A stretch of DNA of 64,000 bases from IMG/VR virus record IMGVR_UViG_3300044641_009805, positions 214,436-278,435 of that record; one strand, 5' to 3'. Below are positions 13,784 through 41,083 of this stretch, piece after piece; the stretch's first letter is position 1, and every line of letters starts with the position of its first letter. The notes beneath the pieces are model-generated. The model worked only from the letters and a program-made list of their open reading frames with translations, had not been told where the DNA came from and searched no databases. The position numbers and the translations under genes were made by a program.

Positions 13784-14851
13784 ATGCAACGTTCATTGTG
13801 CTTCGATGATGTACTGCTCGTCCCTCAACTTTCAGACATAGAGTCTAGATCGCATGTAGATCTTTCAGTGCCGGGATTTGACTCCGCTTTTGCTAGCTTA
13901 ACCGACAAACACGAACAATTAAAGTGTCCCATTGTCGGTTCTCCTATGGACACAGTAATAAGTCCTCAGTCGGCGGCTGTCATTGCAAAGCTTGGAGGCT
14001 TCGGAGTTTTGCATCGATACTGTTCAATCGATGATTCTAAAAAGATGTTTCTTGAAACGGCTAAACTATTGCTTGATGATTGTGACAATAGTTCTTCAGC
14101 TTTTATCCCGAACTTGATGGTGGCTGTTGGTGCGACGGGTGATTATCTTGAAAGAGCAGGTGAACTATACGACGTGGGTTGTAGGGCTTTCTGCGTTGAT
14201 GTTGCGCATGGTCACCACACAAATGTTAAAAATGCTCTAAATAAGCTAAGAGTAAAATTTGGTAAAAAAATTCACATAATGACTGGCAACGTTGCAACTT
14301 TGGAAGCCTTCAATGATCTTGCTGACTGGGGTGCTGATTCCATACGTACCGGTGTCGGAGGAGGATCCATGTGTACAACGAGAATTCGCACGGGACATGG
14401 AGTTCCAACGCTGCAATCAATCATCGATTGTGCAAAATCCGACAGGGACGTTTACATTGTAGCAGATGGTGGAATTAGGAACAGCGGCGATGCAGTGAAA
14501 GCTCTAGCTGCTGGAGCGGACATGGTGATGCTAGGATCAGTTCTTGCTGGACATGATGAATCCCCAGGAGCAATCATTACAAAAGACAACCAACGTTACA
14601 AGAAGTTTCGCGGAATGGCTTCAAGAGAAGCGCAATTGGAATGGAGAGGTAAGGTGTCCGTTGCTGAAGGAGAGTCAACGTTGATCCCTTACAGAGGTTC
14701 TCTTCAAGATACTTTGACAGACCTGCTTGAAGGCATTAAATCAGGTCTGTCATATTCAGGCGCTAAAAGTATTAGAGAGTTTAGAAGCAAAGCTAAATTT
14801 TTAGGTATCACTTCAAATGCTGTCAAAGAAAATGGTCCTCACGGAAAGTGA
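13784..14851 (+). CDS. IMP dehydrogenase / GMP reductase family (no CBS domains)
   Basis: [28 protein letters not shown] catalytic Cys loop, ADGGIR, FRGMAS. Confidence 0.9.
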
Positions 14852-18300: not shown

Positions 18301-18981
18301 GGAATTGGAGAGGCTGCTATCGATGAAATCGTCGAGAACAGACCTTACAAGAGTGTCGAAGAGATGTTGTGGAATGATGATGGTTCATGGAAACATTCCA
18401 AATTTAACAAGCGAGCTTTTGAAGGTCTCATCTCCATCAGAGCGTTTGACTCTCTTGACTGCGTAGGTGAAGGAAAAACATTTAACAGCTACAAACAGAT
18501 GCATCACATCTTGATTGATAAAGGTGCCGATATCAAGAAAACTTCAAAGAAAAATCCTACTCTCGGTATGGAAAACTTTCGAAATCTTTTGATAGAAACA
18601 AATGACATGGATGAGTGGACTCGTGGGGAGTTGGTTGACAACAGCGTGAAATATCTTGGATCATTCAACTCTAACATTTTAGTTTCTCAAGAACTGATTG
18701 CAAAGCTAGAATCTAAAGGTGTCAAATCCATCGACCTCATCGAGCAAACTGACGTTTATTGGTTCATTATTTCTGACGTAAAAGAAAAAAAGACGAAGAA
18801 CGGAAAGCCATACTTGCTTCTGACGGCAATAGGCCTTGAAGGCCAAACCCGTCGGATCTTTTGTTGGGGATGGGATGGCCGAACTGAGTTGCCGAAGTAC
18901 TCCACATGCATAGCAGAAATTACTGTCGATAATTACGGTAATAAAACTTTTATGAGCAAGGTTAAGGTAATCGATGAATAA
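15397..18981 (+). CDS. dnaE: DNA polymerase III alpha subunit (family C)
   Basis: PHP motifs LHAHS, TDHG, GCE; GRGSAAGS, PDIDSD, KFDLLGL, GYGFNASH; C-terminal OB fold. Confidence 0.96.
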   Translation: MTRDNKTASPTRFVGLHAHSTFSQYDGLDYPQEHIDYVLENGMDAWSLTDHGNMNGFCHAFLHAEKMKKSGKNFKFIPGCEMYVHPDLTQWKKDLEASKVKPAKDESIITPITAVVDGDDETTDVGTDEAALTVENEDETKSGKYNDPVKRRHHLVVLPKTSVGLQRLFHLVSRGYMEGFYRFPRIDYSMLKEAAKGDHLMISTACLGGPLAFDAFEQLQKVPFEELKHQLLNDRSLLDRIIATMSNTYDKLVDAVGRDNVCLELQFNKLPAQHLVNRALIEFSKRNSLRDRVVVTCDSHYSRPENWKEREIYKKLGWLNYQNFDPSLLPKSKDDLKCELYPKNAKQVWESYLSTTEGMDFYDDEFVKDAIERTHDIVHNELGDIQPDKTMKLPSYVIPEGTTEDKALVVACKNGLKWRGLDSRQDYIDRIKYELGIIKGKKFSRYFLTMKAIMDIAREHMLIGPGRGSAAGSLVAYVLGITNLDPIEYDLSFERFLNPSRTGAPDIDSDISDRDLLIELLRKNLGERNVIPISNYNTFRLKSLIKDIARFYSIPFEEVNAALAPVEDDVKKEVFKPGTDKNLFVLTYEDAIKYSKSLQDFIAAHPEVAEPIEILFKQNRSLGRHAGGVIVSEDVAERMPLILARGEAQTPWVEGMNYKHLEEFGWIKFDLLGLETLRIIERCIGLILERREGVKNPDFKQIRAWFDKHMDPKNIDLNDQKVYEYVYHEGRFAGIFQLTQTGAQRLFTKAKPRSIIDIATLTSIYRPGPLAANVDKLYIDAKNNPDKIDYQHPLIKKVLESTYGCIIFQEQTMRLCSVVAGFPEAETDTIRRNIMKRSASKKDDAAADARKAKEEFVLGAVKNGVNEKVASELYDKILFFSGYGFNASHAVSYAIDSYYCAWLLTYYEEEWLCAYLESMSGNDEKRAKAFSEVKALGYKIVPIDVNYATKSWTILEGKRFMPSFLSCKGIGEAAIDEIVENRPYKSVEEMLWNDDGSWKHSKFNKRAFEGLISIRAFDSLDCVGEGKTFNSYKQMHHILIDKGADIKKTSKKNPTLGMENFRNLLIETNDMDEWTRGELVDNSVKYLGSFNSNILVSQELIAKLESKGVKSIDLIEQTDVYWFIISDVKEKKTKNGKPYLLLTAIGLEGQTRRIFCWGWDGRTELPKYSTCIAEITVDNYGNKTFMSKVKVIDE

Positions 18982-19507
18982 CATGCATACTGTCGTAATT
19001 TTTGAAGGATGTGATAAAGTTGGTAAGACTGAAATGGCTCGTGAGCTTTCGCGACGAATGGAGATTCCATATTTCAAGAATAAATCAGAATGGAAAGCGT
19101 TTAGCTCAGATCCAGATTATTTCGTGAAGGCTCTTCGATACGGAGACCCTTACTTCTACACTTTTCTTCGAGACACCAAGACGTCTGTTATTCTTGATCG
19201 ATCGTACCCTTCAGAGTGGGTGTATTCAAGAGTTTACGATAGAAAGACCGATCATGATGCTCTGTCTCATATTGATTTTCTTGCAGCTTCTTTTGGCGTT
19301 AAGATAGTCATTCCGTATAGGACTTCTTATTCTGGTCTAAAAGACGATATTCATAACATAGGCGAATATCATCTACAAAAATTGTCAGACATGTATGAAG
19401 AATTTGCAAAGTGGACCAAATGTGACGTACTACGCTTTTGCATTGATTCTGAAAACCTAGAATGGGAAATGGAGACCATTCGTAAATTCTTGAAAAAGGA
19501 GGCATGA
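18974..19507 (+). CDS. Second dNMP kinase (thymidylate kinase-like), probably for a modified nucleotide
   Basis: FEGCDKVGKT P-loop, ILDRSYPSEWVY; coupled between dnaE and glycosyltransferase. Confidence 0.75.
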   Translation: MNNMHTVVIFEGCDKVGKTEMARELSRRMEIPYFKNKSEWKAFSSDPDYFVKALRYGDPYFYTFLRDTKTSVILDRSYPSEWVYSRVYDRKTDHDALSHIDFLAASFGVKIVIPYRTSYSGLKDDIHNIGEYHLQKLSDMYEEFAKWTKCDVLRFCIDSENLEWEMETIRKFLKKEA

Positions 19508-20532
19508 TGCGCATCGGAATTAGTTATTGGGGTTTTTGTGAGCCTTTTGGAGCATCAGGAGAAGCAAAAACGCCTGATGGTCATCGGTATGGTCGTCCTA
19601 TTTTTGTGAACGCAGCTGTCGCATCAGGACATCAGATTTATGCGTTACAAAAGCGTAGAGAAGTTGTGCCATATAAAAACATCAATTATGATGAGGGATT
19701 TCCTGACATAGATGTTTTATTTGTTGAGTGGCGATGGCCAACTTATAAAAATTCAGGAGAAAATCCTGCCGAACCTGATCTGCTCAGGCAAAATGAGCTT
19801 CTTCGGCACTATCACGGAAAGATTCCTGTCGTTATTTGGGATTGTGATTATAAGGTGACACCAGAAGATGAGCTAGCATGGCCTAAAGCTATAATTGCAG
19901 ATCCCGCATTTGAACCAAGATATTTGACCAGAAAAAGAGAAAGATTGATGTTTTGGACAGATTGGCAATTTTTGCTGCAACCGTCCAACGTGTCTTTTGA
20001 ATATGGCTATGTGGGAAACAATTATGAAAGACCAGAAGCATTTTATCAGTACTATTCCTCACCATCAAGAGAGCTAAGAAATCTGGGAATACAGACGACG
20101 GTTCATGGTAATTGGTTAGAAGTTTCTCCTGAGAGAGAACATCCTACATCATTGATAAAACAGCATCCCTTCGTTTCATTCGCTCAACGCTTGAATTTTC
20201 ATGATTCAATGAAAAGGTTGAATTCTTTTATCTGCGCAACACACATAACCAAGCCAGAATACGCCAAACGTGGGTTTGCGTCTCCTCGTTACTTAGAAAA
20301 TATGGCTGTGGGCACGCCTGCTTTGGTCCCATCAGAGTTTTTGATCCCAAACTTATTAGGAAGTGAGTGGACAGTATCGACGTCAGAACAAGTAATTGCT
20401 CAAGTTAAATACATCAGCAAACTTTCTTATGAATTCAGGGTTTCTTTAGTCAAAGAACAAATGACGATTTTGAAAAATAAGAATGTATTTTCTGTAAGCG
20501 ACGTAATAGATTTCTTGGAGACACTCGTATGA
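19504..20532 (+). CDS. GT-B glycosyltransferase resembling T4 DNA beta-glucosyltransferase
   Basis: GYVGN, VHGNW, ICATHITKPEYAKRGFASPRYLENMAVGTPALVPSEF parallels the recalled BGT C-terminal domain. Confidence 0.65.
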   Translation: MMRIGISYWGFCEPFGASGEAKTPDGHRYGRPIFVNAAVASGHQIYALQKRREVVPYKNINYDEGFPDIDVLFVEWRWPTYKNSGENPAEPDLLRQNELLRHYHGKIPVVIWDCDYKVTPEDELAWPKAIIADPAFEPRYLTRKRERLMFWTDWQFLLQPSNVSFEYGYVGNNYERPEAFYQYYSSPSRELRNLGIQTTVHGNWLEVSPEREHPTSLIKQHPFVSFAQRLNFHDSMKRLNSFICATHITKPEYAKRGFASPRYLENMAVGTPALVPSEFLIPNLLGSEWTVSTSEQVIAQVKYISKLSYEFRVSLVKEQMTILKNKNVFSVSDVIDFLETLV

Positions 20533-21530
20533 TGAAAAAAGATAAGGTTCTAATCACAGGCGTAGCTGGACTTCTTGGGGCAAATTTTTCTAGATATCTG
20601 TTGTCCAGAGGTTATGATGTCGTTGGGATTGATGATTTAAGCGGCGGATATCTAGATTCTGTTCCAAAAGAAATGACATTCTACGACGTAGACTTGGTAG
20701 ATCGTCATAAAACAGAAGAGGTATTTGCAAAAGAAAAACCTGATTATGTTTTCCATTTTGCTGCGTACGCAGCAGAAGGATTGAGTCCTTTCATTAGAAA
20801 TTACAACTACACAAACAACGTGTTAGCTTCCGCTAATGTAATTAATGCTTGTGTAAATCATGATATCAAAAAGATTGTTTTTACCTCATCGATGGCGGTA
20901 TATGGAGTAGGCAATCCACCCTTTACAGAAGATCAGCTACCAACCCCAGAGGATCCTTACGGTATTGCGAAATATGCAGTAGAGATGGATCTCAAACTTG
21001 CACATGAAATGTTTGGACTAAGATACAGCATTGTTCGCCCGCACAACGTTGTTGGCATTTATCAAAATATTTGGGATAGGTATCGAAACGTTATAGGCAT
21101 TTGGATTCGTAAAGCTCTTGTTGGAGAACCGCTGACTATCTTTGGAGACGGTACACAAAAACGTGCTTTTTCAGACATCAAGTTCTATATGGCTCCTTTT
21201 GAAAAGCTTATGACGTCTTTTGACGGTGAAACTTTCAACATAGGAGCTGATAAAGATTTCACAATTAACGAAGCTTGCGATCTCGTGATGGACGTTGCAG
21301 CTGAGCTTGGAGTTAAAGCGACCAAGGTTCATTTAGAAAAACGCAATGAAGTGCACACTGCATACTGCGATCACAGTAAAGCTCATAAGCTGTTAGGGTT
21401 TAAAGATGAAACTAATCTTAGAGATATGATTAAAGAAATGTTTGTCTGGGCTATGAAGCAGCCTGATAGACAAATAAAGAACATGGATTATGAGATTGAA
21501 AAGAACATGTACTCTTTTTGGAAGAAATGA
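20529..21530 (+). CDS. NAD-dependent NDP-sugar epimerase/dehydratase (extended SDR)
   Basis: ITGVAGLLG, HFAA, TSSMAVYG, PYGIAK (YxxxK), RPHNVVG, GDGTQKRAF. Confidence 0.92.
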   Translation: MMKKDKVLITGVAGLLGANFSRYLLSRGYDVVGIDDLSGGYLDSVPKEMTFYDVDLVDRHKTEEVFAKEKPDYVFHFAAYAAEGLSPFIRNYNYTNNVLASANVINACVNHDIKKIVFTSSMAVYGVGNPPFTEDQLPTPEDPYGIAKYAVEMDLKLAHEMFGLRYSIVRPHNVVGIYQNIWDRYRNVIGIWIRKALVGEPLTIFGDGTQKRAFSDIKFYMAPFEKLMTSFDGETFNIGADKDFTINEACDLVMDVAAELGVKATKVHLEKRNEVHTAYCDHSKAHKLLGFKDETNLRDMIKEMFVWAMKQPDRQIKNMDYEIEKNMYSFWKK

Positions 21531-22315
21531 TTATGACTTTTCCTGAAAAATTAGCTGATAGAGAAAAATACATTTTTGATCAAGTTTTAGCTGGCAATTT
21601 TGATGCAGAATGGGTTCCTCTCGAATTTTCTTCAGGAGGAAGAACCATTAAATTCAATGTGATGAATGATGCATTGAAAATTGACGGCATAAGAGTTAAT
21701 GTATCTGCAGAACTTCAGCAAAAGTTAGCAGATGTATTTAATGCGTCTTTATTGACAACACATATCGCTGACTTAATGTTTATCAATGCCACGCACCGAG
21801 TAGAGCCCTGTCCTATGACGATATCTTCGACAGTCGATTCTATGATTAAACACAGCAAAATGGTCGATGGAAAAGTTGGGTTTAATGTGACAGGATTAGT
21901 AGCTTCTCCTGGAAAGCATTGGATTTTAGATAAGAAACTAGACTTAAATCCTAGAAGAGCTTGTAACTATGGGTGGCATTTCGTTGGTACGAACTACAAG
22001 GGTATAAAAGGTCACCCAACTGGATCTAAGCAGAACAAGCTAAATGGATCGACGATGTCAGTGATCCAGCCGAATGCAACTGCCCATGATATGAAACATT
22101 CTGATTATTCTCAAATTTGTCAGCTTGTTTCTCAAGCTTGTTGGATCGACGGTGTCATACACCGTTTATCTGACGTTCTGCAAGATCCAACGAATTGTGA
22201 TCTTGCTACCGCTAATGGTCCTTTAAGTTTTGTTAGACAACCTGGTACGTCTCCTTTTGTCGGAACTTCTGTTATGTTTCCTGTAAAAATTACTTCGCAA
22301 GGAGGAATTGTATGA
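21527..22315 (+). CDS. Hypothetical protein
   Basis: Long ORF coupled by ATGA overlap; NYGWH, HSDYSQ conserved-looking blocks. Confidence 0.75.
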   Translation: MIMTFPEKLADREKYIFDQVLAGNFDAEWVPLEFSSGGRTIKFNVMNDALKIDGIRVNVSAELQQKLADVFNASLLTTHIADLMFINATHRVEPCPMTISSTVDSMIKHSKMVDGKVGFNVTGLVASPGKHWILDKKLDLNPRRACNYGWHFVGTNYKGIKGHPTGSKQNKLNGSTMSVIQPNATAHDMKHSDYSQICQLVSQACWIDGVIHRLSDVLQDPTNCDLATANGPLSFVRQPGTSPFVGTSVMFPVKITSQGGIV

Positions 22316-22500
22316 CGTATGAATACGAATGCAAAGCTTGCAATCATCAGTTTGAAGCGGAACAATCAATCAAAGATCCACCATTAACAAACTGCCCTCG
22401 TTGTAAGACTGACTTTTTAAGAAGGCTTATAAGCAAATCAACATTTGTTTTGAAGGGCTCTGGGTGGGCTGCTGATAACTATTCTTCAAAATCTTCTTAG
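22312..22500 (+). CDS. FmdB-family zinc-ribbon protein
   Basis: YEYECKACNHQFE..CPRC..RLIS..FVLKGSGW. Confidence 0.85.
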   Translation: MTYEYECKACNHQFEAEQSIKDPPLTNCPRCKTDFLRRLISKSTFVLKGSGWAADNYSSKSS

Positions 22501-23225
22501 TAAGTAGGTAGCGTGTGTTGTCTCAGCGGACAATCACTTTTGTTGCGAGATGATCTAGAAGCAGGATGCCCAGGTTTCAAGAGGTTGTGTAAGTCTTCTC
22601 CTTCTTTGCTAGCAAAGACTGATTTGACTTCGCCTGTTTCACTATTAAAGATAATAGTATACCCGCCTCTGGACATATCTAGAGGCTTTTTTATAGTGTT
22701 CATATAATCGAACCTACCTGCTTTACTCATCTCCCTATCAAACCAAGCTTCAAGCACAAAGTTAGAGACAGAAACGGGCGTGCCATTGACATCAATCTCA
22801 TACGAGTCTCCTTGAACGGGGTCGCACAATTCCAATGCTACGAAAGTATGATCTCCTCTATTCGACCAAAGATTGACGTAGGGATTGTAGAATGTTTCAA
22901 GTATTTCGTGAGATAGGACGACCGAAACAGCGTGAGTTCCCTTCAACGTAGTTCCGCCATGCTTCAATAACGGGTCCGTAAAAACTCTACACCAAACTCT
23001 TCCGTCAGGATCTTGCGTATGGTATCCAAGAGCACCAGCAACATCTGGAGAGTTAATAAGAACAACGGGGAATCCATCATTACCACCTACCTTTATCTCC
23101 CATGGCATCCTTTCCAGGAGCGGGGCTGCTTGTTGCGTTAACTGTATTTTGCAGGCTTCAACCATGAGGTTCAAATCTGCTTCGGAAACGTTGGTCGATT
23201 TATTGATGACATTAAACGTTCTCAT
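22497..23225 (-). CDS. Hypothetical protein, possible zincin-like peptidase
   Basis: GYHT, LSHEILE, ELCDPVQ..VSNFV. Confidence 0.7.
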   Translation of the reverse strand: MRTFNVINKSTNVSEADLNLMVEACKIQLTQQAAPLLERMPWEIKVGGNDGFPVVLINSPDVAGALGYHTQDPDGRVWCRVFTDPLLKHGGTTLKGTHAVSVVLSHEILETFYNPYVNLWSNRGDHTFVALELCDPVQGDSYEIDVNGTPVSVSNFVLEAWFDREMSKAGRFDYMNTIKKPLDMSRGGYTIIFNSETGEVKSVFASKEGEDLHNLLKPGHPASRSSRNKSDCPLRQHTLPTY

Positions 23226-23230
23226 AATTG

Positions 23231-23238
23231 TAAATATG
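23231..23238 (-). promoter_or_regulatory. TATANTTA-like box
   Basis: CATATTTA-N5-ATG(23225). Confidence 0.45.
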
Positions 23239-23277
23239 AAACAAGCTTGTTTATAATTTAAAAAGGTGTATAATCAT

Positions 23278-24246
23278 ATGAGAATTTTATTGACGGGTGG
23301 TGCGGGCTTCATAGGCAGTAACGTCGCAAAAAGGTTGTTGGCAGAAAATATAGAGTTTGACATCGTTGACGATCTATCGAACGGTCACATGTCGTTTGTT
23401 GATCCTTCGCTGCTGGATCGTAACATTACGATTGCCAGCTTCGACTCCGAAACAATCTTAGCAAAGATAAGGTCTGGATTGTACGATGTTGTTATACACT
23501 TGGCGGCCGTCCCGCGTGTGAGTTATTCCGTCGATTTTCCCCTTGAGTCTCACAACGCAAACGTGACAGCAACAATGAAATTGATTGATGCTTGTCGAGG
23601 AAAGATTAAACGTTTTGTCTTTGCATCCTCGTCCTCTGTTTATGGAGGTGCTGACCAGCTACCAACTCCTCCTGATACCGCAAAGAATCCTAAATCACCT
23701 TACGCTTTGCAAAAATCTATAATTGAAGATTATTTGAAGATGTATTACGATCTTTATGGGTTCGATTCAGTCAGCCTAAGGTTCTTTAACGTCTTTGGTC
23801 CAAATCAATTAGGAAATTCTCCTTATTCCACAGCGGTTTCTGCGTGGGTTAATGCAATTATGAAGGGGACTTCGATGCGTTCTGACGGAGACGGAACGCA
23901 ATCTCGCGACATGTGTTATGTTGATAATGTTGCCGATGCATGCGTAAGAGCAGCAAAGGCAAATTTCCCATTAAAGTCTGAAACTTTAAATGTGGCTTGT
24001 GGCGACAGGACAACAAATAGAGAAATTTTGCAATTTTTGTTGAAAAAATTTCCTGATGCGAAATACCATGATGCTCCTTGGAGACCTGGCGATGTCATGC
24101 ACACTCAAGCTGATATTTCTAGGACAAAAGAAGTTTTAGGTTACACTCCCCTGGTGTATTTTTGGGAAGGATTGGAAAAAACAATCCAGTGGTATCAGGA
24201 CAATTGGGAACTAATTAAAACGTTGAGTGATAAAGAGAATATATGA
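23278..24246 (+). CDS. NAD-dependent NDP-sugar 4-epimerase (WbpP/GalE-like extended SDR)
   Basis: LTGGAGFIGS, HLAA, ASSSSVYG, SPYALQK, LRFFNVFGP, GDGTQSRD. Confidence 0.92.
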   Translation: MRILLTGGAGFIGSNVAKRLLAENIEFDIVDDLSNGHMSFVDPSLLDRNITIASFDSETILAKIRSGLYDVVIHLAAVPRVSYSVDFPLESHNANVTATMKLIDACRGKIKRFVFASSSSVYGGADQLPTPPDTAKNPKSPYALQKSIIEDYLKMYYDLYGFDSVSLRFFNVFGPNQLGNSPYSTAVSAWVNAIMKGTSMRSDGDGTQSRDMCYVDNVADACVRAAKANFPLKSETLNVACGDRTTNREILQFLLKKFPDAKYHDAPWRPGDVMHTQADISRTKEVLGYTPLVYFWEGLEKTIQWYQDNWELIKTLSDKENI

Positions 24247-25241
24247 AAGTTTTTTCTAGCTTCACTGAAGCCTACTATGATCTGCTTCTAGACGTCTACA
24301 AGCATCCTGACTTTGTTTCTTCTCCTCGAGGGCAGAAGATCAGAGAAAAGTTGGGCGTATCATTCAGGATTTCTAATCCTCTTGATAGATTACCGTATGT
24401 AGAGCAAAGAGACTTTAGCTTATCATATTTTGTTGCAGAGTCTTTGTGGTATCTTTCTGGAAACGATTCCACTGAATGGATATCGAATTATTCTTCTTTT
24501 TGGAAGAACATTTCTGATGATGGCACTACAGCTAACAGCGCTTACGGCGCCAGGATTTTTAATCCTCATTCAAGAATTGCTGGTCAAATCGATCCTTCTT
24601 GGACACAATGGGATTACATCTTGAATGAACTGACGACAGATCCAGATTCTCGCCGAGCCGTCGTTCATATTAGATCTCCTCAGGATTCTATCCTAGCCTC
24701 AAAGGACGTTCCTTGCACTTTGTCTTTGCAGTTTTTTTTGCGTAACGATCAGGTTCACATGATAGTCTCTATGAGATCATCTGATCTCATCTTAGGAATT
24801 GCGTATGATGTTCCTGCATTCACGTTGTTTCAAGAGTTGTTGGCTAATCAATTATCGGATAGGCTGAACAGGTCTATAAGCGTTGGTGAGTATACTCACG
24901 TAAGCAATTCTTTGCATATTTATGAAAAGCATTTTGGAATGGTAGAAGAAATTCTAAAAAAACGAGAGTTTTTTAGTTTAGAAATGCCGAAGCTACCAAA
25001 GGGTAAACTACCTTTAGAATATATTTTGGAGCAAGAATCCAAGTGCAGAAATTGTCAGACTATTGATGAATTAAAACAGTTGGCTTCTAATCTCAATGCT
25101 GGTTCTGAATATTGGAATGATTGGTGCAAGATTTTAATTTCGCATAGAGCAAATAAGTTAAAAGGTGTTGATTCTGAAAACTTTAAGTTAGTCCTCTTGA
25201 AATCAACGGAATTTAACGGCTATAAATTTTTTAACAAATAA
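24243..25241 (+). CDS. Thymidylate synthase homolog of dCMP-modifying type (dCMP hydroxymethylase-like)
   Basis: SRRAV, DVPC (catalytic Cys), MRSSDLILGIAYD with Asp at the Asn177-equivalent site, SLHIYE; ThyX already present. Confidence 0.8.
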   Translation: MKVFSSFTEAYYDLLLDVYKHPDFVSSPRGQKIREKLGVSFRISNPLDRLPYVEQRDFSLSYFVAESLWYLSGNDSTEWISNYSSFWKNISDDGTTANSAYGARIFNPHSRIAGQIDPSWTQWDYILNELTTDPDSRRAVVHIRSPQDSILASKDVPCTLSLQFFLRNDQVHMIVSMRSSDLILGIAYDVPAFTLFQELLANQLSDRLNRSISVGEYTHVSNSLHIYEKHFGMVEEILKKREFFSLEMPKLPKGKLPLEYILEQESKCRNCQTIDELKQLASNLNAGSEYWNDWCKILISHRANKLKGVDSENFKLVLLKSTEFNGYKFFNK

Positions 25242-26656: not shown

Positions 26657-27385
26657 ATGAACAAGCTTATAGATCCTCAAAAAATAGACTCGTTATTAAA
26701 AAAAGCTGTTAAGGACAGCATCTCCAAAAAAGCGCCATCTATTGGTTTAACGCCTCAAGCAGATCAGATAAATGAATCTTACGTTGCTGAGCCCAAGGTT
26801 TTTAAACAAGTAACTGAGTTTGTTACTCAAAAAACCAAAGATGCTCATTATGATCTCTACAAGGGCTACGTCGAATCATTCAACAAAGTATCTGCTGAAC
26901 TCGACACTTCAAAACGTGGAGATGCTAACCCTCGTCACTCATCGTATAAATCTCTGAAAAAAGATGAGGTTTATAACCTAAACGCGATTTGGCTTCACGA
27001 GTTATACTTCTCGAATTGTTTCGACCCACATTCTGAGATCACGATGGACTCTTTGTCTTATTTACGATTGGAACGAGATTTCGGCACATTTGAAGACTGG
27101 CAAAGAGATTTCATAGCGTGTTCAAACTCAGCAGGAGTTGGTTGGGCTGTTTGCGGATATCACATGTTTTTGCAGCGATATGTGAATACTTTCGTCGGAA
27201 GTCATGATGCGAATGTCATGTTGGGTATATACCCAGTGATCGTTCTAGACGTTTGGGAACATGCTTATCGTGATTACTTGAACGACAAACAGAGCTATAT
27301 AGTTTCTCAAATGAGAGAAATTAATTGGAATGTGGTTGAAGAAAGAGTTAAGAAAGCCGAGCAAATTGCGCAGGTATTAAAATGA
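26657..27385 (+). CDS. Fe/Mn superoxide dismutase family protein with N-terminal extension
   Basis: AHYDLYKGY, LHELYF, FGTFEDW, GWA, LDVWEHAY, INWNVV. Confidence 0.88.
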   Translation: MNKLIDPQKIDSLLKKAVKDSISKKAPSIGLTPQADQINESYVAEPKVFKQVTEFVTQKTKDAHYDLYKGYVESFNKVSAELDTSKRGDANPRHSSYKSLKKDEVYNLNAIWLHELYFSNCFDPHSEITMDSLSYLRLERDFGTFEDWQRDFIACSNSAGVGWAVCGYHMFLQRYVNTFVGSHDANVMLGIYPVIVLDVWEHAYRDYLNDKQSYIVSQMREINWNVVEERVKKAEQIAQVLK

Positions 27386-34954: not shown

Positions 34955-35195
34955 AAAGAAGCTAGAGCAAATTTTGTTAGAAATACGTAGTTATGCTATG
35001 AACGTGAAAGATTGGCAGACTATAAAAAAGGAAATTTTAAAATCCTTGCCTCCATCTGACAGGAAGTTTTTTTCTACAAGAGATCCATACACCAAACAGC
35101 AGACGTTAAATGAATTTGAACGTACGGTTGTAGAAAAATGGGAGAAATTAACGAGCGTTAAACTGATAATTAAGAGTCGTGATGCAAGAAAATAA
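34947..35195 (+). CDS. Hypothetical protein
   Basis: 82 aa coupled ORF. Confidence 0.65.
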   Translation: MDEKKLEQILLEIRSYAMNVKDWQTIKKEILKSLPPSDRKFFSTRDPYTKQQTLNEFERTVVEKWEKLTSVKLIIKSRDARK

Positions 35196-36072
35196 ATTAT
35201 TAAGAGAGTACGTTCGACGAATTCTAACAGAAGAGATGTCAGGCGACTATTCGGCGTCCTACATGTCAGGTGGTAGTACCTTTGGTGGCACAGCCATAAA
35301 GACAGCATTCGTAGATCCCGTTACTGATATTTTCAAGATATTGAAAGGTAGAGCAAAAGAATTATTCTCAGGAGTAAAAAGACTCGCCCGCGTGTCTCTT
35401 AGCGGAGGGTTGGGTCTCTTGACAGCTGGCGCTTGGGAACCGAATTATCAAGCCGCCAAAGACGCGTACAACAATGAAATATCGAAGATAAGAAGTGAGT
35501 ATGAAGGTGCAAGATCGGCCGGTATAAAAGCTTTGTTGGCTAGCGATTTAGTCGCAATCGGTTTTTTATATAACCCAGCGGCCGTGATGACGGCAAAAGC
35601 CGCATTAGAAAATATAAGAAAAAGTAACTCTGTCTTGTTAGAGCGTGAGGAAGACGCAGGAAAAAAGCAAAAATTACCGCAGGTTCCTGCTGAGCTGGTC
35701 GAAAAAGCTCATGCAGCCGTCGATAGATATTTCGGTAAGATCAAAAATGATCTTTCAAAAGTTAAATCTGCAAAGAACTTGCAACAGCTGAATGCACCGA
35801 AAGAGACAATAGACAAGATGTCAGCTGAGCTGTCGGAAAAACCTGAAGCAGAGAAAAAGCAAGCGGAAGAAAAGATTTTAGAAGCTGGCAAACATCAAAT
35901 TTTCATGACTTCAATCAAAACTTTGAAGCAAGAAAGAGATAAGATAGTTGGTCAGATGAAGGAAAAAGGGATTTCAACTTCTGATATAATGTCTAAAGAA
36001 GGATTGCCTGCCAGGTACTCTGAAGAAATAAAGAAAATTGCTGCGATGATCGGCATCAACGCCAAAGAATAA
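35182..36072 (+). CDS. Hypothetical helical protein with LLREYVRRILTEE motif
   Basis: Long ORF; motif at N-terminus. Confidence 0.78.
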   Translation: MQENKLLREYVRRILTEEMSGDYSASYMSGGSTFGGTAIKTAFVDPVTDIFKILKGRAKELFSGVKRLARVSLSGGLGLLTAGAWEPNYQAAKDAYNNEISKIRSEYEGARSAGIKALLASDLVAIGFLYNPAAVMTAKAALENIRKSNSVLLEREEDAGKKQKLPQVPAELVEKAHAAVDRYFGKIKNDLSKVKSAKNLQQLNAPKETIDKMSAELSEKPEAEKKQAEEKILEAGKHQIFMTSIKTLKQERDKIVGQMKEKGISTSDIMSKEGLPARYSEEIKKIAAMIGINAKE

Positions 36073-36076
36073 TTGA

Positions 36077-36105
36077 TTGAACAAGGATTTTTTTTAGATT
36101 ATAAT
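36077..36105 (+). promoter_or_regulatory. Sigma70-like promoter (TTGAAC-17 class), leaderless
   Basis: TTGAAC-N17-TATAAT-N6-ATG(36112). Confidence 0.7.
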
Positions 36106-36111
36106 CATTGT

Positions 36112-36408
36112 ATGTCTAAAAAAAATGCTTCTCAAAAAAATTACAACGTAGAAACGATGCAGCCAGATGAGATTAACTCTCTGCGCACTCTAGTTAAAGA
36201 GTTTATCCACAAGATCGAATCTATTGATAATGAGATAGAGCTCTTAAAAGGAGATCGAAAAGAGATCATTGAAGAGTACTCTGAAAAGCTAGATATGAAA
36301 ACTTTGCAATCTGCTCTTAAGGTCGTCAAGATCCAACAAGCAGTTGCGCATAAAGATACGTTTGATCTATTTCTTGAGGCATTGACGGGCGTAGAAAAAT
36401 CAACTTGA
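36112..36408 (+). CDS. GapR/DUF2312/T4 DsbA-like dsDNA-binding protein
   Basis: LRTLVKEFIHKIESIDNEIELLKGDRKEII..LDMKTLQSALK pattern. Confidence 0.6.
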   Translation: MSKKNASQKNYNVETMQPDEINSLRTLVKEFIHKIESIDNEIELLKGDRKEIIEEYSEKLDMKTLQSALKVVKIQQAVAHKDTFDLFLEALTGVEKST

Positions 36409-36776
36409 AGGAAACAACAATGGATAACTCTAGAGAAGCTTTGCTGAAACCAAAAAAGACTTTTACCTTAAAATTATCGCTTGCTGAGCTGATCCATCTA
36501 AGGGATCTTTTTAGTATTTCTTTGCCTGTTGATTTAAAAACAACAGTGAGCCAATCTCTTGCGATTGGGCAAGGAAGGCAAATCGTAGAAACGAAGCTGT
36601 GGAATAAAATTGTGAATCTTTGTAAAGAAGGCAGTGTTCCGTTGGAAGAAGAATCTCCAGACTTTATAATCACCGTGACAGCTCCTCCTGAGTTAGGAGT
36701 CTTTGAAGTTGCTTCTGATTATGATCAATCCTCTGAACCAGCACCTGATTCAGAAGACGATGCAGATGATGAGTAG
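36405..36776 (+). CDS. Hypothetical protein
   Basis: Coupled ORF, acidic tail. Confidence 0.7.
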   Translation: MKETTMDNSREALLKPKKTFTLKLSLAELIHLRDLFSISLPVDLKTTVSQSLAIGQGRQIVETKLWNKIVNLCKEGSVPLEEESPDFIITVTAPPELGVFEVASDYDQSSEPAPDSEDDADDE

Positions 36777-36786
36777 CTAAGAGGGA

Positions 36787-37206
36787 ATGATGACATCACG
36801 TTCTTATAGAGTTGGGCAGATTCTTTACGTCTTAACCAACAAAGAAACGAAAATTTATCCTCTACAAATTGTAGAAGAGATAATAAAAAGAACAGTCTCA
36901 GGAGAATCCATTTCGTATATTGCGAAGGTTGGGAAAAACGCAAGAACAATTTCTTTATCTGATGTTGACGGAGAGCTCTATGAAGACATAGAAGACTTAC
37001 GTAGAGATCTCACTCATCGTGTGATGAATACCGTGAATAACATCATAGATTCTTCTGCTTTAAAGGCCGAAGAGTGGTATCCACGTTCTGAAGTTCATTC
37101 TCCTATAATTGATCCGTTGCAGCAGCGAGAAGAAAAAGCTGTGGTGGTTCTTCCTGATGGAAAAGTTGCAAATTTGAAATTATCCAACAACGTAAACGAA
37201 GAATAA
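36787..37206 (+). CDS. Hypothetical protein
   Basis: 139 aa ORF with SD. Confidence 0.7.
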
Positions 37207-37211
37207 AGGAA

Positions 37212-38456
37212 ATGATAATGGAAGCAAGATTCGATGGAATCGTTCGTAACTATTCAGAAAAAGATGTTGATAGATTAACAGGCACGGTTACGTTACAACA
37301 CACGTTAGCTACGATAGGTGCTAATAAGCTTCGAAAATTAATATGCGAGCAACCTTATGTCTCTGCATTAGGAGCTCTTACAGGTAATCAAGCCGTTCAA
37401 CAGGTAAAAGCAGGGCTCAAAGCCATTTATTTGTCAGGTTGGCAGGTTGCAGCAGATGCCAATCTAGCAGGTGAAATGTATCCGGATCAGAGTCTTTATC
37501 CCGTTAATAGTGTTCCTTCAGTCGTTAGAAGAATTAATAATGCTCTTCAACGTGCCGATCAAATTGATCATGCCGAAGGCAAATCTGGTACAGATTGGTT
37601 CGCTCCAATTGTGGCCGATGCCGAGGCCGGATTTGGCGGTCCTCTTAACGTCTTTGAACTCACGAAAGCAATGATTGAAGCCGGCGCTGCCGGTGTACAT
37701 TTCGAGGATCAGTTAGCATCAGAAAAGAAGTGTGGCCACATGGGTGGTAAGGTTCTGGTTCCTACATCACATTTCATTCGTACGTTAACAGCAGCCCGCC
37801 TCGCTGCAGACGTTATGGGTGTTCCCACGGTGATCATTGCCAGGACAGACGCTGATTCTGCAAATCTTATCACCAGCGATGTTGATCCTTACGATCACGA
37901 TTACATCGAAGCGACGAAAGAAAGAACTCCAGAGGGTTTTCATTATCTGTGTAGAACAGGACTTGAGAGGTCAGTCGCCCGTGGACTAGCGTATGCTCCA
38001 TATGCCGATTTACTTTGGATGGAAACATCGACTCCTGATCTTGATCAAGCAAAACAATTTGCCGAAGCTATTCACGAGAAGTTTCCAGGAAAACCTCTCG
38101 CTTACAACTGTTCACCTTCTTTTAACTGGAAGAAGAATCTGGACGACTCGACTATCGCCAAGTTTCAAAGAGAGCTAGGAGCCATGGGCTATAAGTTTCA
38201 GTTTGTTACCTTGGCAGGATTTCATACCCTCAACCATTCTATGTATCAATTAGCCCATGGATATAAAGATCATGGCATGGCGGCTTATTCAAAACTACAA
38301 CAGGCGGAATTTGATGCAGAAAAAATCGGCTACACGGCCACGAAGCACCAACGAGAGGTTGGGACGGGTTATTTCGATGCTGTGTCTCAGGTTATCTCCG
38401 CCGGCAATTCTTCAACTTTGGCGTTGCATGGTTCTACCGAAGAAGAACAATTTTAA
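37212..38456 (+). CDS. aceA: Isocitrate lyase
   Basis: [40 protein letters not shown] catalytic motif, [24 protein letters not shown]. Confidence 0.96.
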
Positions 38457-38501
38457 AAAAAATCTCAGTTGAATTTTTATTTATTGTCAGGAGGCGTAGT
38501 T

Positions 38502-38735
38502 ATGCGCGACCTGACACCGAACGAACTAGGTGTTATGTTATTTAATATCAAGGGCGACCTTGAGATTATTGCTGGCACCTTATCTAATTGGAGAATGAAG
38601 GGATTAGGTCAAAATGGCATGGTCCCTCTTTCTGTTATTGCTGCTGAGACAAAAATAAATGCCACGATAACAGAAGTTGAAGATTTAATTCAAATATTAG
38701 CAAAGGTATCTAATAATTTGATTGATAGATATTAG
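38502..38735 (+). CDS. Hypothetical protein
   Basis: AGGAGG SD before ATG 38502. Confidence 0.7.
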   Translation: MRDLTPNELGVMLFNIKGDLEIIAGTLSNWRMKGLGQNGMVPLSVIAAETKINATITEVEDLIQILAKVSNNLIDRY

Positions 38736-38744
38736 TCAAAACTT

Positions 38745-39008
38745 ATGACAAAGAATAAGCTGAAGCGGTTAATTTTCGATTTTATTATGGAATCAAGAGT
38801 AGCCGCTTCGGCTTCTTATATGAAAAAGGAAGAAGTGAGACAGTCTCTTCAAGATTTGATCTCTCAAAAAGTCGCCGCAGGAGAAATATCCGATCAAGAA
38901 TCTCTTGACGAATGGTTTGCAACGGCTGAGATGTCTCTTAAAGCTTTAAAAATGGTTCCGTTGATTGTTTACCAGACGACGTCTACAAAAAAGGTCAAGC
39001 GTCGATGA
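38745..39008 (+). CDS. Hypothetical protein with KLKRLIFDFIME motif
   Basis: ORF; motif variant. Confidence 0.7.
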   Translation: MTKNKLKRLIFDFIMESRVAASASYMKKEEVRQSLQDLISQKVAAGEISDQESLDEWFATAEMSLKALKMVPLIVYQTTSTKKVKRR

Positions 39009-39193
39009 AGATGAGCCTTGTTGAAGGTGTAGATTACACGATAGAAAACAACAAGATGGTTTTTACAAAAGATTTTCTTTTGAGGCGTGGGTATTGTTGC
39101 AATTCTCGTTGTCGAAATTGTCCATACTCTAAAGAGATTCGTTCAGGAGATTCACGAGATGAATCTTCTGTGCAAATCGTCAAAAGTTCATGA
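39005..39193 (+). CDS. Small Cys-rich protein (DUF5522-like)
   Basis: DY.IEN..MVFT..FLLRRGYCCNSRCRNCPY. Confidence 0.7.
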   Translation: MKMSLVEGVDYTIENNKMVFTKDFLLRRGYCCNSRCRNCPYSKEIRSGDSRDESSVQIVKSS

Positions 39194-39199
39194 TACCAT
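39170..39199 (+). promoter_or_regulatory. GTGNAA-N18-TANNNT promoter, leaderless
   Basis: GTGCAA-N18-TACCAT-N6-ATG(39206). Confidence 0.8.
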
Positions 39200-39205
39200 G
39201 TTGGT

Positions 39206-39787
39206 ATGGGTATCGGTAAGATTGAGCTGTCTAAAGCAAATTCCATTGCAAACGCTGTTCTTAGTCACATCATGCCGTCAATCGACCGCGGTGAAATTGC
39301 TGGATCTATTCGCAGGCAAAAAGACGTCGTCGGCGACATTGAGATCGTAGCCATCTCAACGCAACGAGACCGTTTGTTGTCGTTGCTGTCGGATGTCGGC
39401 CAACACATCAAACCTGGAGTTCCTGGTGCGGTTCCTTGGTCTCCAAAAGCCTCCGCAAAGTATCTTCGGGTTCGCTTACAGGAAGGCATGAATCTAGATC
39501 TTTTCATGGCATCACCAGAGAACTGGGGTGGTCTTTTTCTCATGCGAACTGGCTCAGGCGCGGGTCTTGATGGCAATTCCTTCAATGGCTTCACTCCTGG
39601 AATCTTTTCAAGATGGAAGAAGCTCTCTGGTGGTGGCCGCATGACCGACTGCATGCCGACGATGCCGACAGGCGAACAACTATGGATTCCTGAGGAAAAA
39701 GATTTCTTTGATTTGCTTGAAATGAACTTTGTGCCACCGGCAGAAAGAACCGGTCGCCAAGTCATCAAGAAATACATTCGCGGTTGA
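39206..39787 (+). CDS. Minimal DNA polymerase X (catalytic and C-terminal domains only)
   Basis: IAGSIRRQK..VGDIEIV, LDLF, GGLFLMRTGS. Confidence 0.85.
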   Translation: MGIGKIELSKANSIANAVLSHIMPSIDRGEIAGSIRRQKDVVGDIEIVAISTQRDRLLSLLSDVGQHIKPGVPGAVPWSPKASAKYLRVRLQEGMNLDLFMASPENWGGLFLMRTGSGAGLDGNSFNGFTPGIFSRWKKLSGGGRMTDCMPTMPTGEQLWIPEEKDFFDLLEMNFVPPAERTGRQVIKKYIRG

Positions 39788-39819
39788 TTTTGAAGAATTC
39801 TCGAATATTTACTACCGTC

Positions 39820-40563
39820 ATGAAAATAATCATTTTTGATTTAGACGGTACGTTGGCAGAAAGCAAATCACGAATAACATCAGGTATGGCTGATGCCTTT
39901 CGGCGTTTGCTCGCTTCTTACGATGTTGCTGTCATTTCAGGCGGCGCGTGGCCACAATTTGAATCGCAATTAGTTAATCAGCTTGGGTTGACGCCTGAAT
40001 TGTCACATCGTTTGCATTTGTTCCCAACATCGGGTACAAGTTTCTACAATAATCATGACGGAAAAAAGTGGATGCAGGTTTACTGCGAAGACCTTACAGA
40101 CAAAGAAGTAAAAAAGATCATGTCTGCCTTCAAGAAGATCCTGTCAAACCCAGGAGTAAGCATGCCCAAACGATTTTGGGGCGATCAGATCGAAAATCGT
40201 GGAACGCAAATCACATTCTCTGCCATGGGCCAGTTGGCTCCTGTAGCCGAGAAAAAGAAATGGGATCCGAATTTCTTCAAACGTCTCATTCTCATCGATC
40301 AGCTTCGGCAACTCTTGCCAGAATTTGACCTTAGAGCAGGTGGTTCCACTTCCATCGACGTGACAAGAAAAGGAATCGACAAGGCATACGGAATTTCTCA
40401 AATCGAGAAACATCTAGGGTTTTCCAAAGAAGACATGTTGTTCATTGGAGATGCGCTATTCCCGGGAGGAAATGACTATGCGGTGAAAACCACAGGAGTT
40501 CAGTGCATAGAAACCACCGGACCTGAACTCACGGCACAAATTATTGAACAATTGCTTGCATGA
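39820..40563 (+). CDS. Phosphomannomutase-like HAD-IIB phosphatase/mutase
   Basis: FDLDGTL, ISGG, IENRGTQITFS, GGSTSIDV, IDKAY, FIGD..FPGGND. Confidence 0.85.
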   Translation: MKIIIFDLDGTLAESKSRITSGMADAFRRLLASYDVAVISGGAWPQFESQLVNQLGLTPELSHRLHLFPTSGTSFYNNHDGKKWMQVYCEDLTDKEVKKIMSAFKKILSNPGVSMPKRFWGDQIENRGTQITFSAMGQLAPVAEKKKWDPNFFKRLILIDQLRQLLPEFDLRAGGSTSIDVTRKGIDKAYGISQIEKHLGFSKEDMLFIGDALFPGGNDYAVKTTGVQCIETTGPELTAQIIEQLLA

Positions 40564-40564
40564 T

Positions 40565-40572
40565 TATAATTA
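40565..40572 (+). promoter_or_regulatory. TATANTTA box
   Basis: TATAATTA-N19(contains GAGG)-ATG(40592). Confidence 0.5.
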
Positions 40573-40591
40573 ACTACATTCAAGAGGCAAC

Positions 40592-41083
40592 ATGAAGATA
40601 CGTTTGGGCGATCTAAAGAGGATTATTCGTGAAACAGTCGAAAGCGTTGCGACAGCCGGTTCGAACGATTCCAAAACAGCATATAAAGAATTTTTGGCTT
40701 TAGAAAAATCGTTAAGAGGCCCATCTGCTGCACCTCTTGTCGTGCTTTTTTTCAAATTTTTTGGAGGCACTCCTGAAGATCTTCAAGAGATCTATGGTTT
40801 TTCGGGCGGCAACTATGGCAAATTCTTTGCTGCTGTTGAAAAAGACCCTAGCAATCGAAACACAGCACAGCAAATAAGCTCAGTTTTTGAACTTCTTAAA
40901 TTAGGAATGACTGCCGAGCAACTTTCAGCCGACGCTAAAAAGTATGATGAAGGCCGTAAACGTTTTCAGGAAAAATATGAACGTGACCCAATGTACGCCA
41001 GCTCGACGAAGGTAGTTGTAGATCAGATGACAGGTATGCCCGTTTCAAGCGAAGAAGTAGATCAAGGTAGACTAGGTACCTGA
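40592..41083 (+). CDS. Hypothetical protein with MKIRLGDLKRIIRE motif
   Basis: ORF with SD; shared motif. Confidence 0.8.
   Translation: MKIRLGDLKRIIRETVESVATAGSNDSKTAYKEFLALEKSLRGPSAAPLVVLFFKFFGGTPEDLQEIYGFSGGNYGKFFAAVEKDPSNRNTAQQISSVFELLKLGMTAEQLSADAKKYDEGRKRFQEKYERDPMYASSTKVVVDQMTGMPVSSEEVDQGRLGT

What the first reader, a model, noticed from the sequence alone, without database searches (positions are those of the whole stretch)
37212..38456. Full-length isocitrate lyase in a phage
Seen: all AceA motifs including KKCGH are intact, flanked on both sides by phage-type unknown ORFs, with SD and no malate synthase in the window. Established: AceA gates the glyoxylate shunt, sparing carbon from CO2 loss and supporting gluconeogenesis from acetyl-CoA. 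Inference: rare auxiliary metabolic gene that could feed sugar-phosphate and nucleotide-sugar demand of glycosylated DNA in a host living on amino acids or lipids (as myxobacteria do).
Basis: partly seen in the sequence, partly recalled or inferred. Interest (0 to 1): 0.66.

Follow-up and report, generated by a model that had tools for sequence, protein, structure and literature searches.

The report
Isocitrate lyase in a lake jumbo phage
A large contractile-tailed phage from lake water carries an intact isocitrate lyase, kept under strong selection but with no malate synthase; this kind of phage metabolic gene has already been reported, so it is a solid but not new finding.

Summary
Window 37212-38456 (+) is an open 414-codon frame. 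The likelier start is the ATG at 37218, giving 412 aa. It scores 749 bits on NCBIfam's isocitrate lyase equivalog (cut-off 562) and is about 75% identical to solved bacterial isocitrate lyases (ICLs), with KKCGH and the other active-site blocks conserved.

It sits in a 278-kb IMG/VR virus record. The same contig carries major head, portal, tail-sheath, baseplate, tape-measure and lysozyme genes and 14 tRNAs.

Mis-assembly or host contamination is excluded. The same gene order appears in independent assemblies, single contigs from two other studies span both junctions, and the gene's codon composition matches the phage rather than cellular ICLs.

The gene belongs to a well-supported clade found only on virus-like contigs (78-100% identical; best cellular hit 75%). 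Synonymous sites are saturated, and dN/dS is about 0.1 where it can be measured.

No malate synthase, AceK, isocitrate dehydrogenase, aconitase or citrate synthase occurs in the record. Malate synthase is also absent from nine related records, one of them 97% complete.

The auxiliary-metabolic-gene (AMG) reading is supported. The link to glycosylated DNA is circumstantial, and the myxobacterial host is unsupported. A 2025 preprint already reports ICL in 98 huge phages, with the freshwater ones lacking malate synthase.

The parts
37218..38456 (+). Isocitrate lyase (AceA-type) coding sequence, 412 aa from the likelier start. The longest frame starts at 37212 (414 aa).
   Evidence: Gene callers on identical public copies give 412 aa.
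37207..37211 (+). Shine-Dalgarno-like AAGGA. It lies about 6-8 nt before the ATG at 37218 and abuts the ATG at 37212.
   Evidence: Read directly from the sequence.
36073..37206 (+). Three small ORFs of unknown function (36073-36408, 36405-36776, 36787-37206). They sit directly upstream of ICL in the window and in five related viral contigs. The last one ends 5 nt before the ICL frame.
   Evidence: No Pfam or PHROG hit. Synteny with L003, L008, L009, L010 and L013 at 35-81% amino-acid identity.
38469..38735 (+). Small unknown ORF 12 nt downstream of ICL on the same strand, probably co-transcribed with it.
   Evidence: A homologue follows ICL in L008 and L070. No promoter or terminator signal above chance.

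Best explanation
This is a catalytically competent isocitrate lyase (EC 4.1.3.1) carried as an auxiliary metabolic gene by a freshwater, contractile-tailed jumbo phage with a distantly T4-like capsid.

It was taken from a bacterium long ago and has since been kept by a lineage of such phages. That lineage carries neither malate synthase nor any other TCA or glyoxylate-shunt enzyme.

During infection the enzyme would split host isocitrate into succinate and glyoxylate. This diverts carbon away from the two CO2-releasing, NADH-producing TCA steps.

What happens next is inferred, not shown. The most likely route is that host malate synthase turns glyoxylate into malate, which conserves carbon for oxaloacetate, PEP, sugar and nucleotide synthesis while succinate feeds respiration.

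Shown: gene identity, the viral setting, purifying selection and the absence of malate synthase. Inferred: enzyme activity, expression, and the fate of the products.
For: **Identity**
- Equivalog HMM 749 bits against a cut-off of 562; E 6.5e-201 to a solved ICL.
- [40 protein letters not shown] and the C-terminal lid are all conserved against E. coli AceA.

**Phage setting**
- Head, portal, three tail-sheath genes, baseplate and tape-measure genes are on the same contig.
- Lysozyme is in the window, and the record has 14 tRNAs.

**Not an artefact**
- An identical gene in the same context appears in a 282-kb ENA contig, a 31-kb JGI contig and three short contigs.
- Logan contigs of 25 kb and 10 kb from two other studies span 35000-40600 without any joint.
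- ICL GC3 is 0.362, the 56th percentile of the genome's genes, against 0.61-0.98 in cellular relatives.

**Kept by selection**
- The clade of 11 virus-only rows has support 100/99.
- Synonymous sites are saturated (pS 0.76-0.87) while amino-acid identity stays at 78-89%. dN/dS is 0.117 against the closest relative.
- ICL is the best-conserved gene in its neighbourhood.

**No partner enzymes**
- Searches find none in the record.
- Malate synthase is absent from 9 of 9 clade records, including one 361-kb record that is 97% complete.

**Agrees with the literature:**
Against: - No activity or expression data exist. The only RNA-labelled runs hold short, low-depth pieces and are probably DNA.
- The host is unknown, so it is not known whether it supplies malate synthase.
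- The record is 84% complete, so a partner gene could lie in the missing part. The 97% complete relative argues against that.
- The protein lacks roughly 12-24 N-terminal residues found in solved cellular ICLs, and the effect of this was not tested.
Confidence: 0.75

Rival explanations
1. Host DNA was joined to phage DNA by mis-assembly, or the contig is bacterial (for example from a Chlamydiota genome).
For: The only named close homologue, at 89% identity, is labelled as a Chlamydiae bacterium MAG protein.
Against: - That MAG contig is itself phage-like and syntenic with the window.
- Independent assemblies and contigs from other studies span both junctions.
- Codon composition matches the phage.
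- Structural genes lie on the same contig.
- No species-representative genome has an ICL above 75% identity.
Confidence: 0.02
2. The enzyme works alone, not as half of a glyoxylate shunt. The phage wants glyoxylate (for glycine, and hence purines and one-carbon units), or succinate, or relief from NADH and oxidative stress. Alternatively, it installs the missing half of a shunt in a host that has malate synthase but no ICL.
For: - Malate synthase is consistently absent across the clade, even at 97% completeness.
- A second large virus-only ICL clade also lacks it, including a complete 337-kb genome with terminal repeats.
- An Fe/Mn superoxide-dismutase-like gene lies 10 kb upstream, and nucleotide-metabolism genes are in the window.
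Against: - No glyoxylate aminotransferase or glyoxylate reductase is present. The only class-V-like aminotransferase hit is a DegT-type sugar aminotransferase.
- Other phage ICL clades do carry an adjacent malate synthase, which shows that the full shunt is what phages assemble when they carry both.
- Many bacteria supply malate synthase themselves.
Confidence: 0.2
3. It acts mainly as a 2-methylisocitrate lyase (propionate handling), or it is an inactive relic.
For: The family includes bifunctional enzymes, and the Pfam PEP_mutase superfamily hit overlaps.
Against: - Methylisocitrate lyase models score far below their cut-offs.
- From memory of the structural literature, ICL-type specificity residues are Trp in SGW and Phe/Thr in the FQF-x-TLAG block. 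All three are present.
- Strong purifying selection argues against a relic.
Confidence: 0.03

Closest known systems
Bacterial AceA isocitrate lyases (E. coli AceA; solved structures such as 6lrp, 7cmx, 1f61)
   Same: 65% identical to E. coli AceA and about 75% to 6lrp over the full length. All active-site blocks and the C-terminal lid are conserved.
   Different: - Encoded on a phage.
- About 12-24 residues shorter at the N-terminus.
- No aceB or aceK partner.
- AT-rich, phage-like codon usage.
Isocitrate lyases of huge phages reported in bioRxiv 10.1101/2025.02.27.640493
   Same: Huge phage, freshwater source, ICL present without malate synthase, exactly the pattern that paper describes. The paper drew on IMG/VR huge phages, and another record from this sample is in its genome table.
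   Different: I could not confirm that this record is one of their 98, because the stored table is cut. That paper gives no phylogeny, selection analysis or assembly check for this lineage.
aceBA operon of the marine T4-like viral genome TARA_ERS478052_N000008 (PMC5332604)
   Same: A large phage with T4-like structural genes that carries ICL together with several sugar and polysaccharide biosynthesis genes.
   Different: That virus has malate synthase next to ICL. This lineage has none.
Phage C48C1 (OQ984149, Kyanoviridae, 156 kb)
   Same: The only true phage in INPHARED with an ICL homologue. It also lacks malate synthase and has nucleotide-sugar genes about 8 kb upstream.
   Different: Only 60% identical, on a long branch in a different part of the tree, so probably a separate acquisition. 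It is annotated as a hypothetical protein.

Membership tests
Isocitrate lyase (AceA, EC 4.1.3.1; NCBIfam NF011645 / TIGR01346, Pfam PF00463) | Scores above the curated cut-off of the equivalog model over its full length | tested here: met
   749 bits against a cut-off of 562, covering model positions 20-428 of 430. Pfam ICL scores 330 bits against 26.
Isocitrate lyase (AceA, EC 4.1.3.1; NCBIfam NF011645 / TIGR01346, Pfam PF00463) | Catalytic KKCGH loop with the general-base cysteine | tested here: met
   K170-K171-C172-G173-H174 (412-aa numbering) are invariant in alignment A1 with E. coli AceA.
Isocitrate lyase (AceA, EC 4.1.3.1; NCBIfam NF011645 / TIGR01346, Pfam PF00463) | Mg2+ and substrate-binding residues (SGW, YPDQ Asp, ADAEAG Asp/Glu, HFED His/Glu, ARTD Arg, NCSPS Asn/Ser/Ser, TLAG Thr) | tested here: met
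   All are invariant columns in A1. The assignment of roles to these residues comes from memory of the Mycobacterium ICL structural literature.
Isocitrate lyase (AceA, EC 4.1.3.1; NCBIfam NF011645 / TIGR01346, Pfam PF00463) | TIM-barrel tetramer with a swapped helix and a C-terminal lid | not tested
   Inferred from about 75% identity to solved structures. No fold or complex job was run. The N-terminus is shorter than in solved ICLs.
Isocitrate lyase (AceA, EC 4.1.3.1; NCBIfam NF011645 / TIGR01346, Pfam PF00463) | Cleaves isocitrate to succinate and glyoxylate | not testable with these tools
   Needs an enzyme assay or genetic complementation.
Phage auxiliary metabolic gene | Lies inside a genuine viral genome with viral genes on both sides | tested here: met
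   Hallmark genes are on the same contig. The flanking ORFs are shared with other viral contigs. The junctions are confirmed in independent assemblies.
Phage auxiliary metabolic gene | Cellular origin, and maintained by selection in the virus | tested here: met
   The clade branches among bacterial ICLs, with its sister unresolved. dN/dS is about 0.1 and synonymous sites are saturated.
Phage auxiliary metabolic gene | Expressed during infection | tested here: inconclusive
   The two runs labelled RNA hold only 151-278-nt pieces and are probably DNA.
Complete glyoxylate shunt module (aceBA / aceBAK) | Malate synthase, and in enterics AceK, encoded together with ICL | tested here: not met
   No PF01274 or PF06315 match in the 278-kb record. 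None in nine related records.

The most novel reading that the evidence does not exclude
In this freshwater lineage, and in a second independent one, phages keep isocitrate lyase alone because the aim is not the classical shunt. One possibility is that ICL completes a latent pathway in hosts that have malate synthase but no ICL. Another is that it is used by itself to make glyoxylate and succinate and to lower NADH and oxidative stress during infection, perhaps together with the phage's superoxide-dismutase-like gene.
Probability: 0.2. Interest if true: 0.6.

Novelty: already known. Interest (0 to 1): 0.33.

Why it matters
Phage-encoded central-carbon enzymes change how infected cells route carbon, and so how much carbon lake bacteria respire or pass on.

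This case gives a clean, well-verified example: true viral context, strong selection, and no malate synthase even in near-complete relatives. It could serve as a test subject for what a lone isocitrate lyase does in an infected cell.

It does not open a new category. ICL in viromes (2013), in a marine T4-like genome (2017) and in 98 huge phages (2025) is already on record.

Tried and rejected
- **Host contamination or chimeric assembly:** rejected.
- **Chlamydiota origin of the closest named homologue:** rejected. That contig is phage-like and syntenic with the window. Looking up other NCBI-sourced homologues gave no further taxon names.
- **Myxobacterial donor or host:** the tree does not resolve the sister group. 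A forced clade with Myxococcota is not rejected (p-AU 0.20) but also not favoured.
- **Cyanophage markers:** psbA and nblA are absent.
- **Nearby DNA matches:** megablast of 20 kb against cultured phages found nothing.
- **A glyoxylate aminotransferase candidate:** it turned out to be a DegT-type sugar aminotransferase.
- **Expression evidence:** the RNA-labelled runs were fragmentary and are probably DNA.
- **Preprint's list of ICL phages:** the stored supplement is cut, so the list could not be read.
- **Whether ICL is a core gene of the lineage:** capsid relatives in IMG/VR are too fragmentary. Two of the four records over 160 kb have ICL.
- **Transcription signals:** promoter and terminator scans around the gene were at chance level.
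- **Not run:** structure and complex predictions were judged redundant at about 75% identity to solved structures.

Full report
**1. The observation**

The frame 37212-38456 (+) is open and encodes 414 aa.
- It matches Pfam ICL (E 2e-98).
- It scores 749 bits on NCBIfam's isocitrate lyase equivalog NF011645, whose cut-off is 562. The methylisocitrate lyase models score 85-103 bits against cut-offs near 354.
- Against solved structures, the best hit is an isocitrate lyase (6lrp, E 6.5e-201), aligned from residue 5 to the last residue. Fourteen bacterial ICL sequences with solved structures follow at E below 1e-160.
- In an alignment with E. coli K-12 AceA (65% identity), all of these are invariant: the KKCGH loop, the blocks [31 protein letters not shown] and TLAG, and the C-terminal STE..QF tail. 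The assignment of these blocks to catalysis, Mg2+ and substrate binding is from my memory of the ICL structural literature.
- The protein is about 12-24 residues shorter at the N-terminus than the solved cellular enzymes. Its phage relatives share this.
- AAGGA lies at 37207-37211. It abuts the first ATG and sits 6-8 nt before the second ATG at 37218. That is the start gene callers chose on identical public copies, giving 412 aa.

**2. Is it in a phage?**

The window is the last 64 kb of a 278,435-base IMG/VR virus record that CheckV rates 84% complete.
- The same contig carries a gp23-type major head protein, a portal, three paralogous tail-sheath genes, a baseplate wedge, a tape measure and SbcCD.
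- The window holds a phage lysozyme, and the record has 14 tRNAs.
- Coding density is 93%.
- The ORFs next to ICL have no Pfam or PHROG hit. Further neighbours are a NUDIX hydrolase, a weak polymerase-beta-like protein, a HAD/phosphomannomutase-like hydrolase and a flap-type 5'-3' exonuclease.
- The nearest cultured capsid relatives are Microcystis phage Mel-JY01 (35% identity over 95% of the protein) and Flavobacterium phage immuto (43% over 75%), followed by T4-like cyanophages. The phage is therefore a distant T4-like jumbo phage.
- The host is unknown. psbA and nblA are absent.

**3. Artefact checks**

- *Independent assemblies.* The identical protein in the same gene order occurs in a 282-kb ENA contig, a 31-kb JGI contig from another sample and three short contigs.
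- *Other studies.* Eighteen runs, all lake, freshwater or aquatic metagenomes, hold at least half of the sampled words of 35000-40600. In two runs from other studies, single contigs of 25 kb and 10 kb cover the whole 5.6 kb with 10 and 17 mismatches and no joints.
- *Composition.* ICL has GC3 0.362, the 56th percentile of the genome's genes. The closest cellular ICL genes have GC3 0.61-0.98.

Mis-assembly and contamination are excluded.

**4. Relatives and evolution**

- *Close homologues.* The word search returned over 100 metagenomic proteins at 81-100% identity, all 407-426 aa apart from two 371-aa fragments. Some lie on contigs up to 371 kb.
- *The Chlamydiae label.* Only one of these carries an organism name, a Chlamydiae bacterium MAG protein. 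It lies on a contig that is phage-like and syntenic with the window, so the label is most likely a binning error.
- *Cellular genomes.* Among one genome per prokaryote species, the best match is 75%, shared by Myxococcota, Ktedonobacteria, Acidobacteriota and Chloroflexus.
- *Tree.* The window's ICL falls in a clade of 11 rows, all from viral or metagenomic contigs, with support 100/99. Its sister group is unresolved. Forcing it together with Myxococcota costs 30.9 log-likelihood units but is not rejected (p-AU 0.20).
- *Selection.* Within the clade, synonymous sites are saturated (pS 0.76-0.87) while proteins stay 78-89% identical. For the closest pair, dN/dS is 0.117.
- *Neighbourhood.* ICL is the best-conserved gene in its surroundings. 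Three small upstream ORFs travel with it in five relatives, at 35-81% identity.
- *Other viral ICL clades.* IMG/VR holds several more, so phages seem to have acquired ICL several times.

**5. Partner enzymes**

- The record has no malate synthase, AceK, isocitrate dehydrogenase, aconitase, citrate synthase or 2-hydroxyacid dehydrogenase.
- The one class-V-like aminotransferase hit is a DegT-type sugar aminotransferase.
- Malate synthase is absent from all nine records of the window's clade, including one of 361 kb rated 97% complete.
- It is also absent from the sampled records of a second large virus-only clade, including a complete 337-kb genome with terminal repeats.
- It is present in 18 of the 50 records searched, which belong to other ICL clades.

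**6. How it most likely works**

The enzyme should cleave host isocitrate to succinate and glyoxylate. This bypasses the two decarboxylating, NADH-producing TCA steps. Because the phage supplies no partner, the fate of glyoxylate depends on the host. Host malate synthase is the simplest route, giving malate, oxaloacetate and PEP for biosynthesis. All of this is inferred.

- The phage has two NDP-sugar epimerase/dehydratases, a weak glycosyltransferase hit, a PMM-like hydrolase and a PseB/PseC/GNAT-like cluster.
- Two other ICL phages also carry sugar-nucleotide genes.

DNA glycosylation itself is not shown. A rival reading is that ICL acts alone, for glyoxylate, succinate or redox relief. This remains open.

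**7. What is already known**

- aceA and aceB were seen in ocean viromes in 2013 (PMC4053976).
- An aceBA operon was described in a complete marine T4-like viral genome in 2017 (PMC5332604).
- A 2025 preprint reports ICL in 98 huge phages and notes that malate synthase occurs only in marine, soil and plant-related ones, not in freshwater ones (10.1101/2025.02.27.640493).

The present gene fits that pattern, so the finding is real but already described in kind. This analysis adds the assembly verification, the virus-only clade, the selection signal, the absence of malate synthase in near-complete relatives, and a recombination breakpoint inside the gene.

Noticed in passing
window 37201-37800 versus L070 (IMGVR_UViG_3300022752_000015): There is a recombination mosaic inside ICL. 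DNA identity to this related 213-kb phage is 97-100% upstream and in the 3' half of ICL. It drops to 74-79% in the 5' 600 bp of ICL, and again to about 80% beyond 39000.
   Followed up: partly
window 26657-27385 (+): A 242-aa protein with an Fe/Mn superoxide dismutase C-terminal domain lies 10 kb upstream of ICL. It may be a second stress or redox gene.
   Followed up: no
window 13784-14851, 19504-25241 (+): The window holds a GMP-reductase/IMPDH-family gene, a weak glycosyltransferase hit, two NDP-sugar epimerase/dehydratases and a divergent thymidylate-synthase-family gene. Together they suggest nucleotide or DNA modification, which was not tested.
   Followed up: partly
L186 9670-12362 (G000:C1:137670-140362): A PseB-like dehydratase, a DegT-type sugar aminotransferase and a GNAT acetyltransferase lie in a row. 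This looks like an amino-sugar or nonulosonic-acid pathway in the phage.
   Followed up: partly
L176 3649-13076 (G000:C1:177649-187076): Three tandem paralogous tail-sheath genes of about 1,010-1,020 aa each.
   Followed up: no
window 15397-18981 (+): The replicative polymerase is a DnaE-type Pol III alpha (phrog_405). This is unusual beside a gp23-type capsid. The nearest phage hits are only 26-30% identical.
   Followed up: no
L003 / L004 (JGI 3300020183 and 3300020578 contigs): GenBank protein MBM3194147.1, labelled as a Chlamydiae bacterium MAG protein, sits on a phage-like contig syntenic with this window. It is probably mis-binned.
   Followed up: yes
L001 7992-9233 (Phage C48C1, OQ984149): A complete Kyanoviridae genome has an ICL homologue (60% identity) annotated as a hypothetical protein. 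It has no malate synthase.
   Followed up: partly
L006 13312-17960 (JGI 3300034073 contig, 366 kb): A related ICL-carrying huge phage encodes a DUF444 / SpoVR / PrkA triad just downstream of ICL.
   Followed up: no
L040-L087 (IMG/VR): A separate clade of 33 ICLs, found only on IMG/VR contigs, nests among Burkholderiales-type ICLs. None of its sampled records has malate synthase, including a complete 337-kb genome with terminal repeats. This is probably an independent acquisition.
   Followed up: partly
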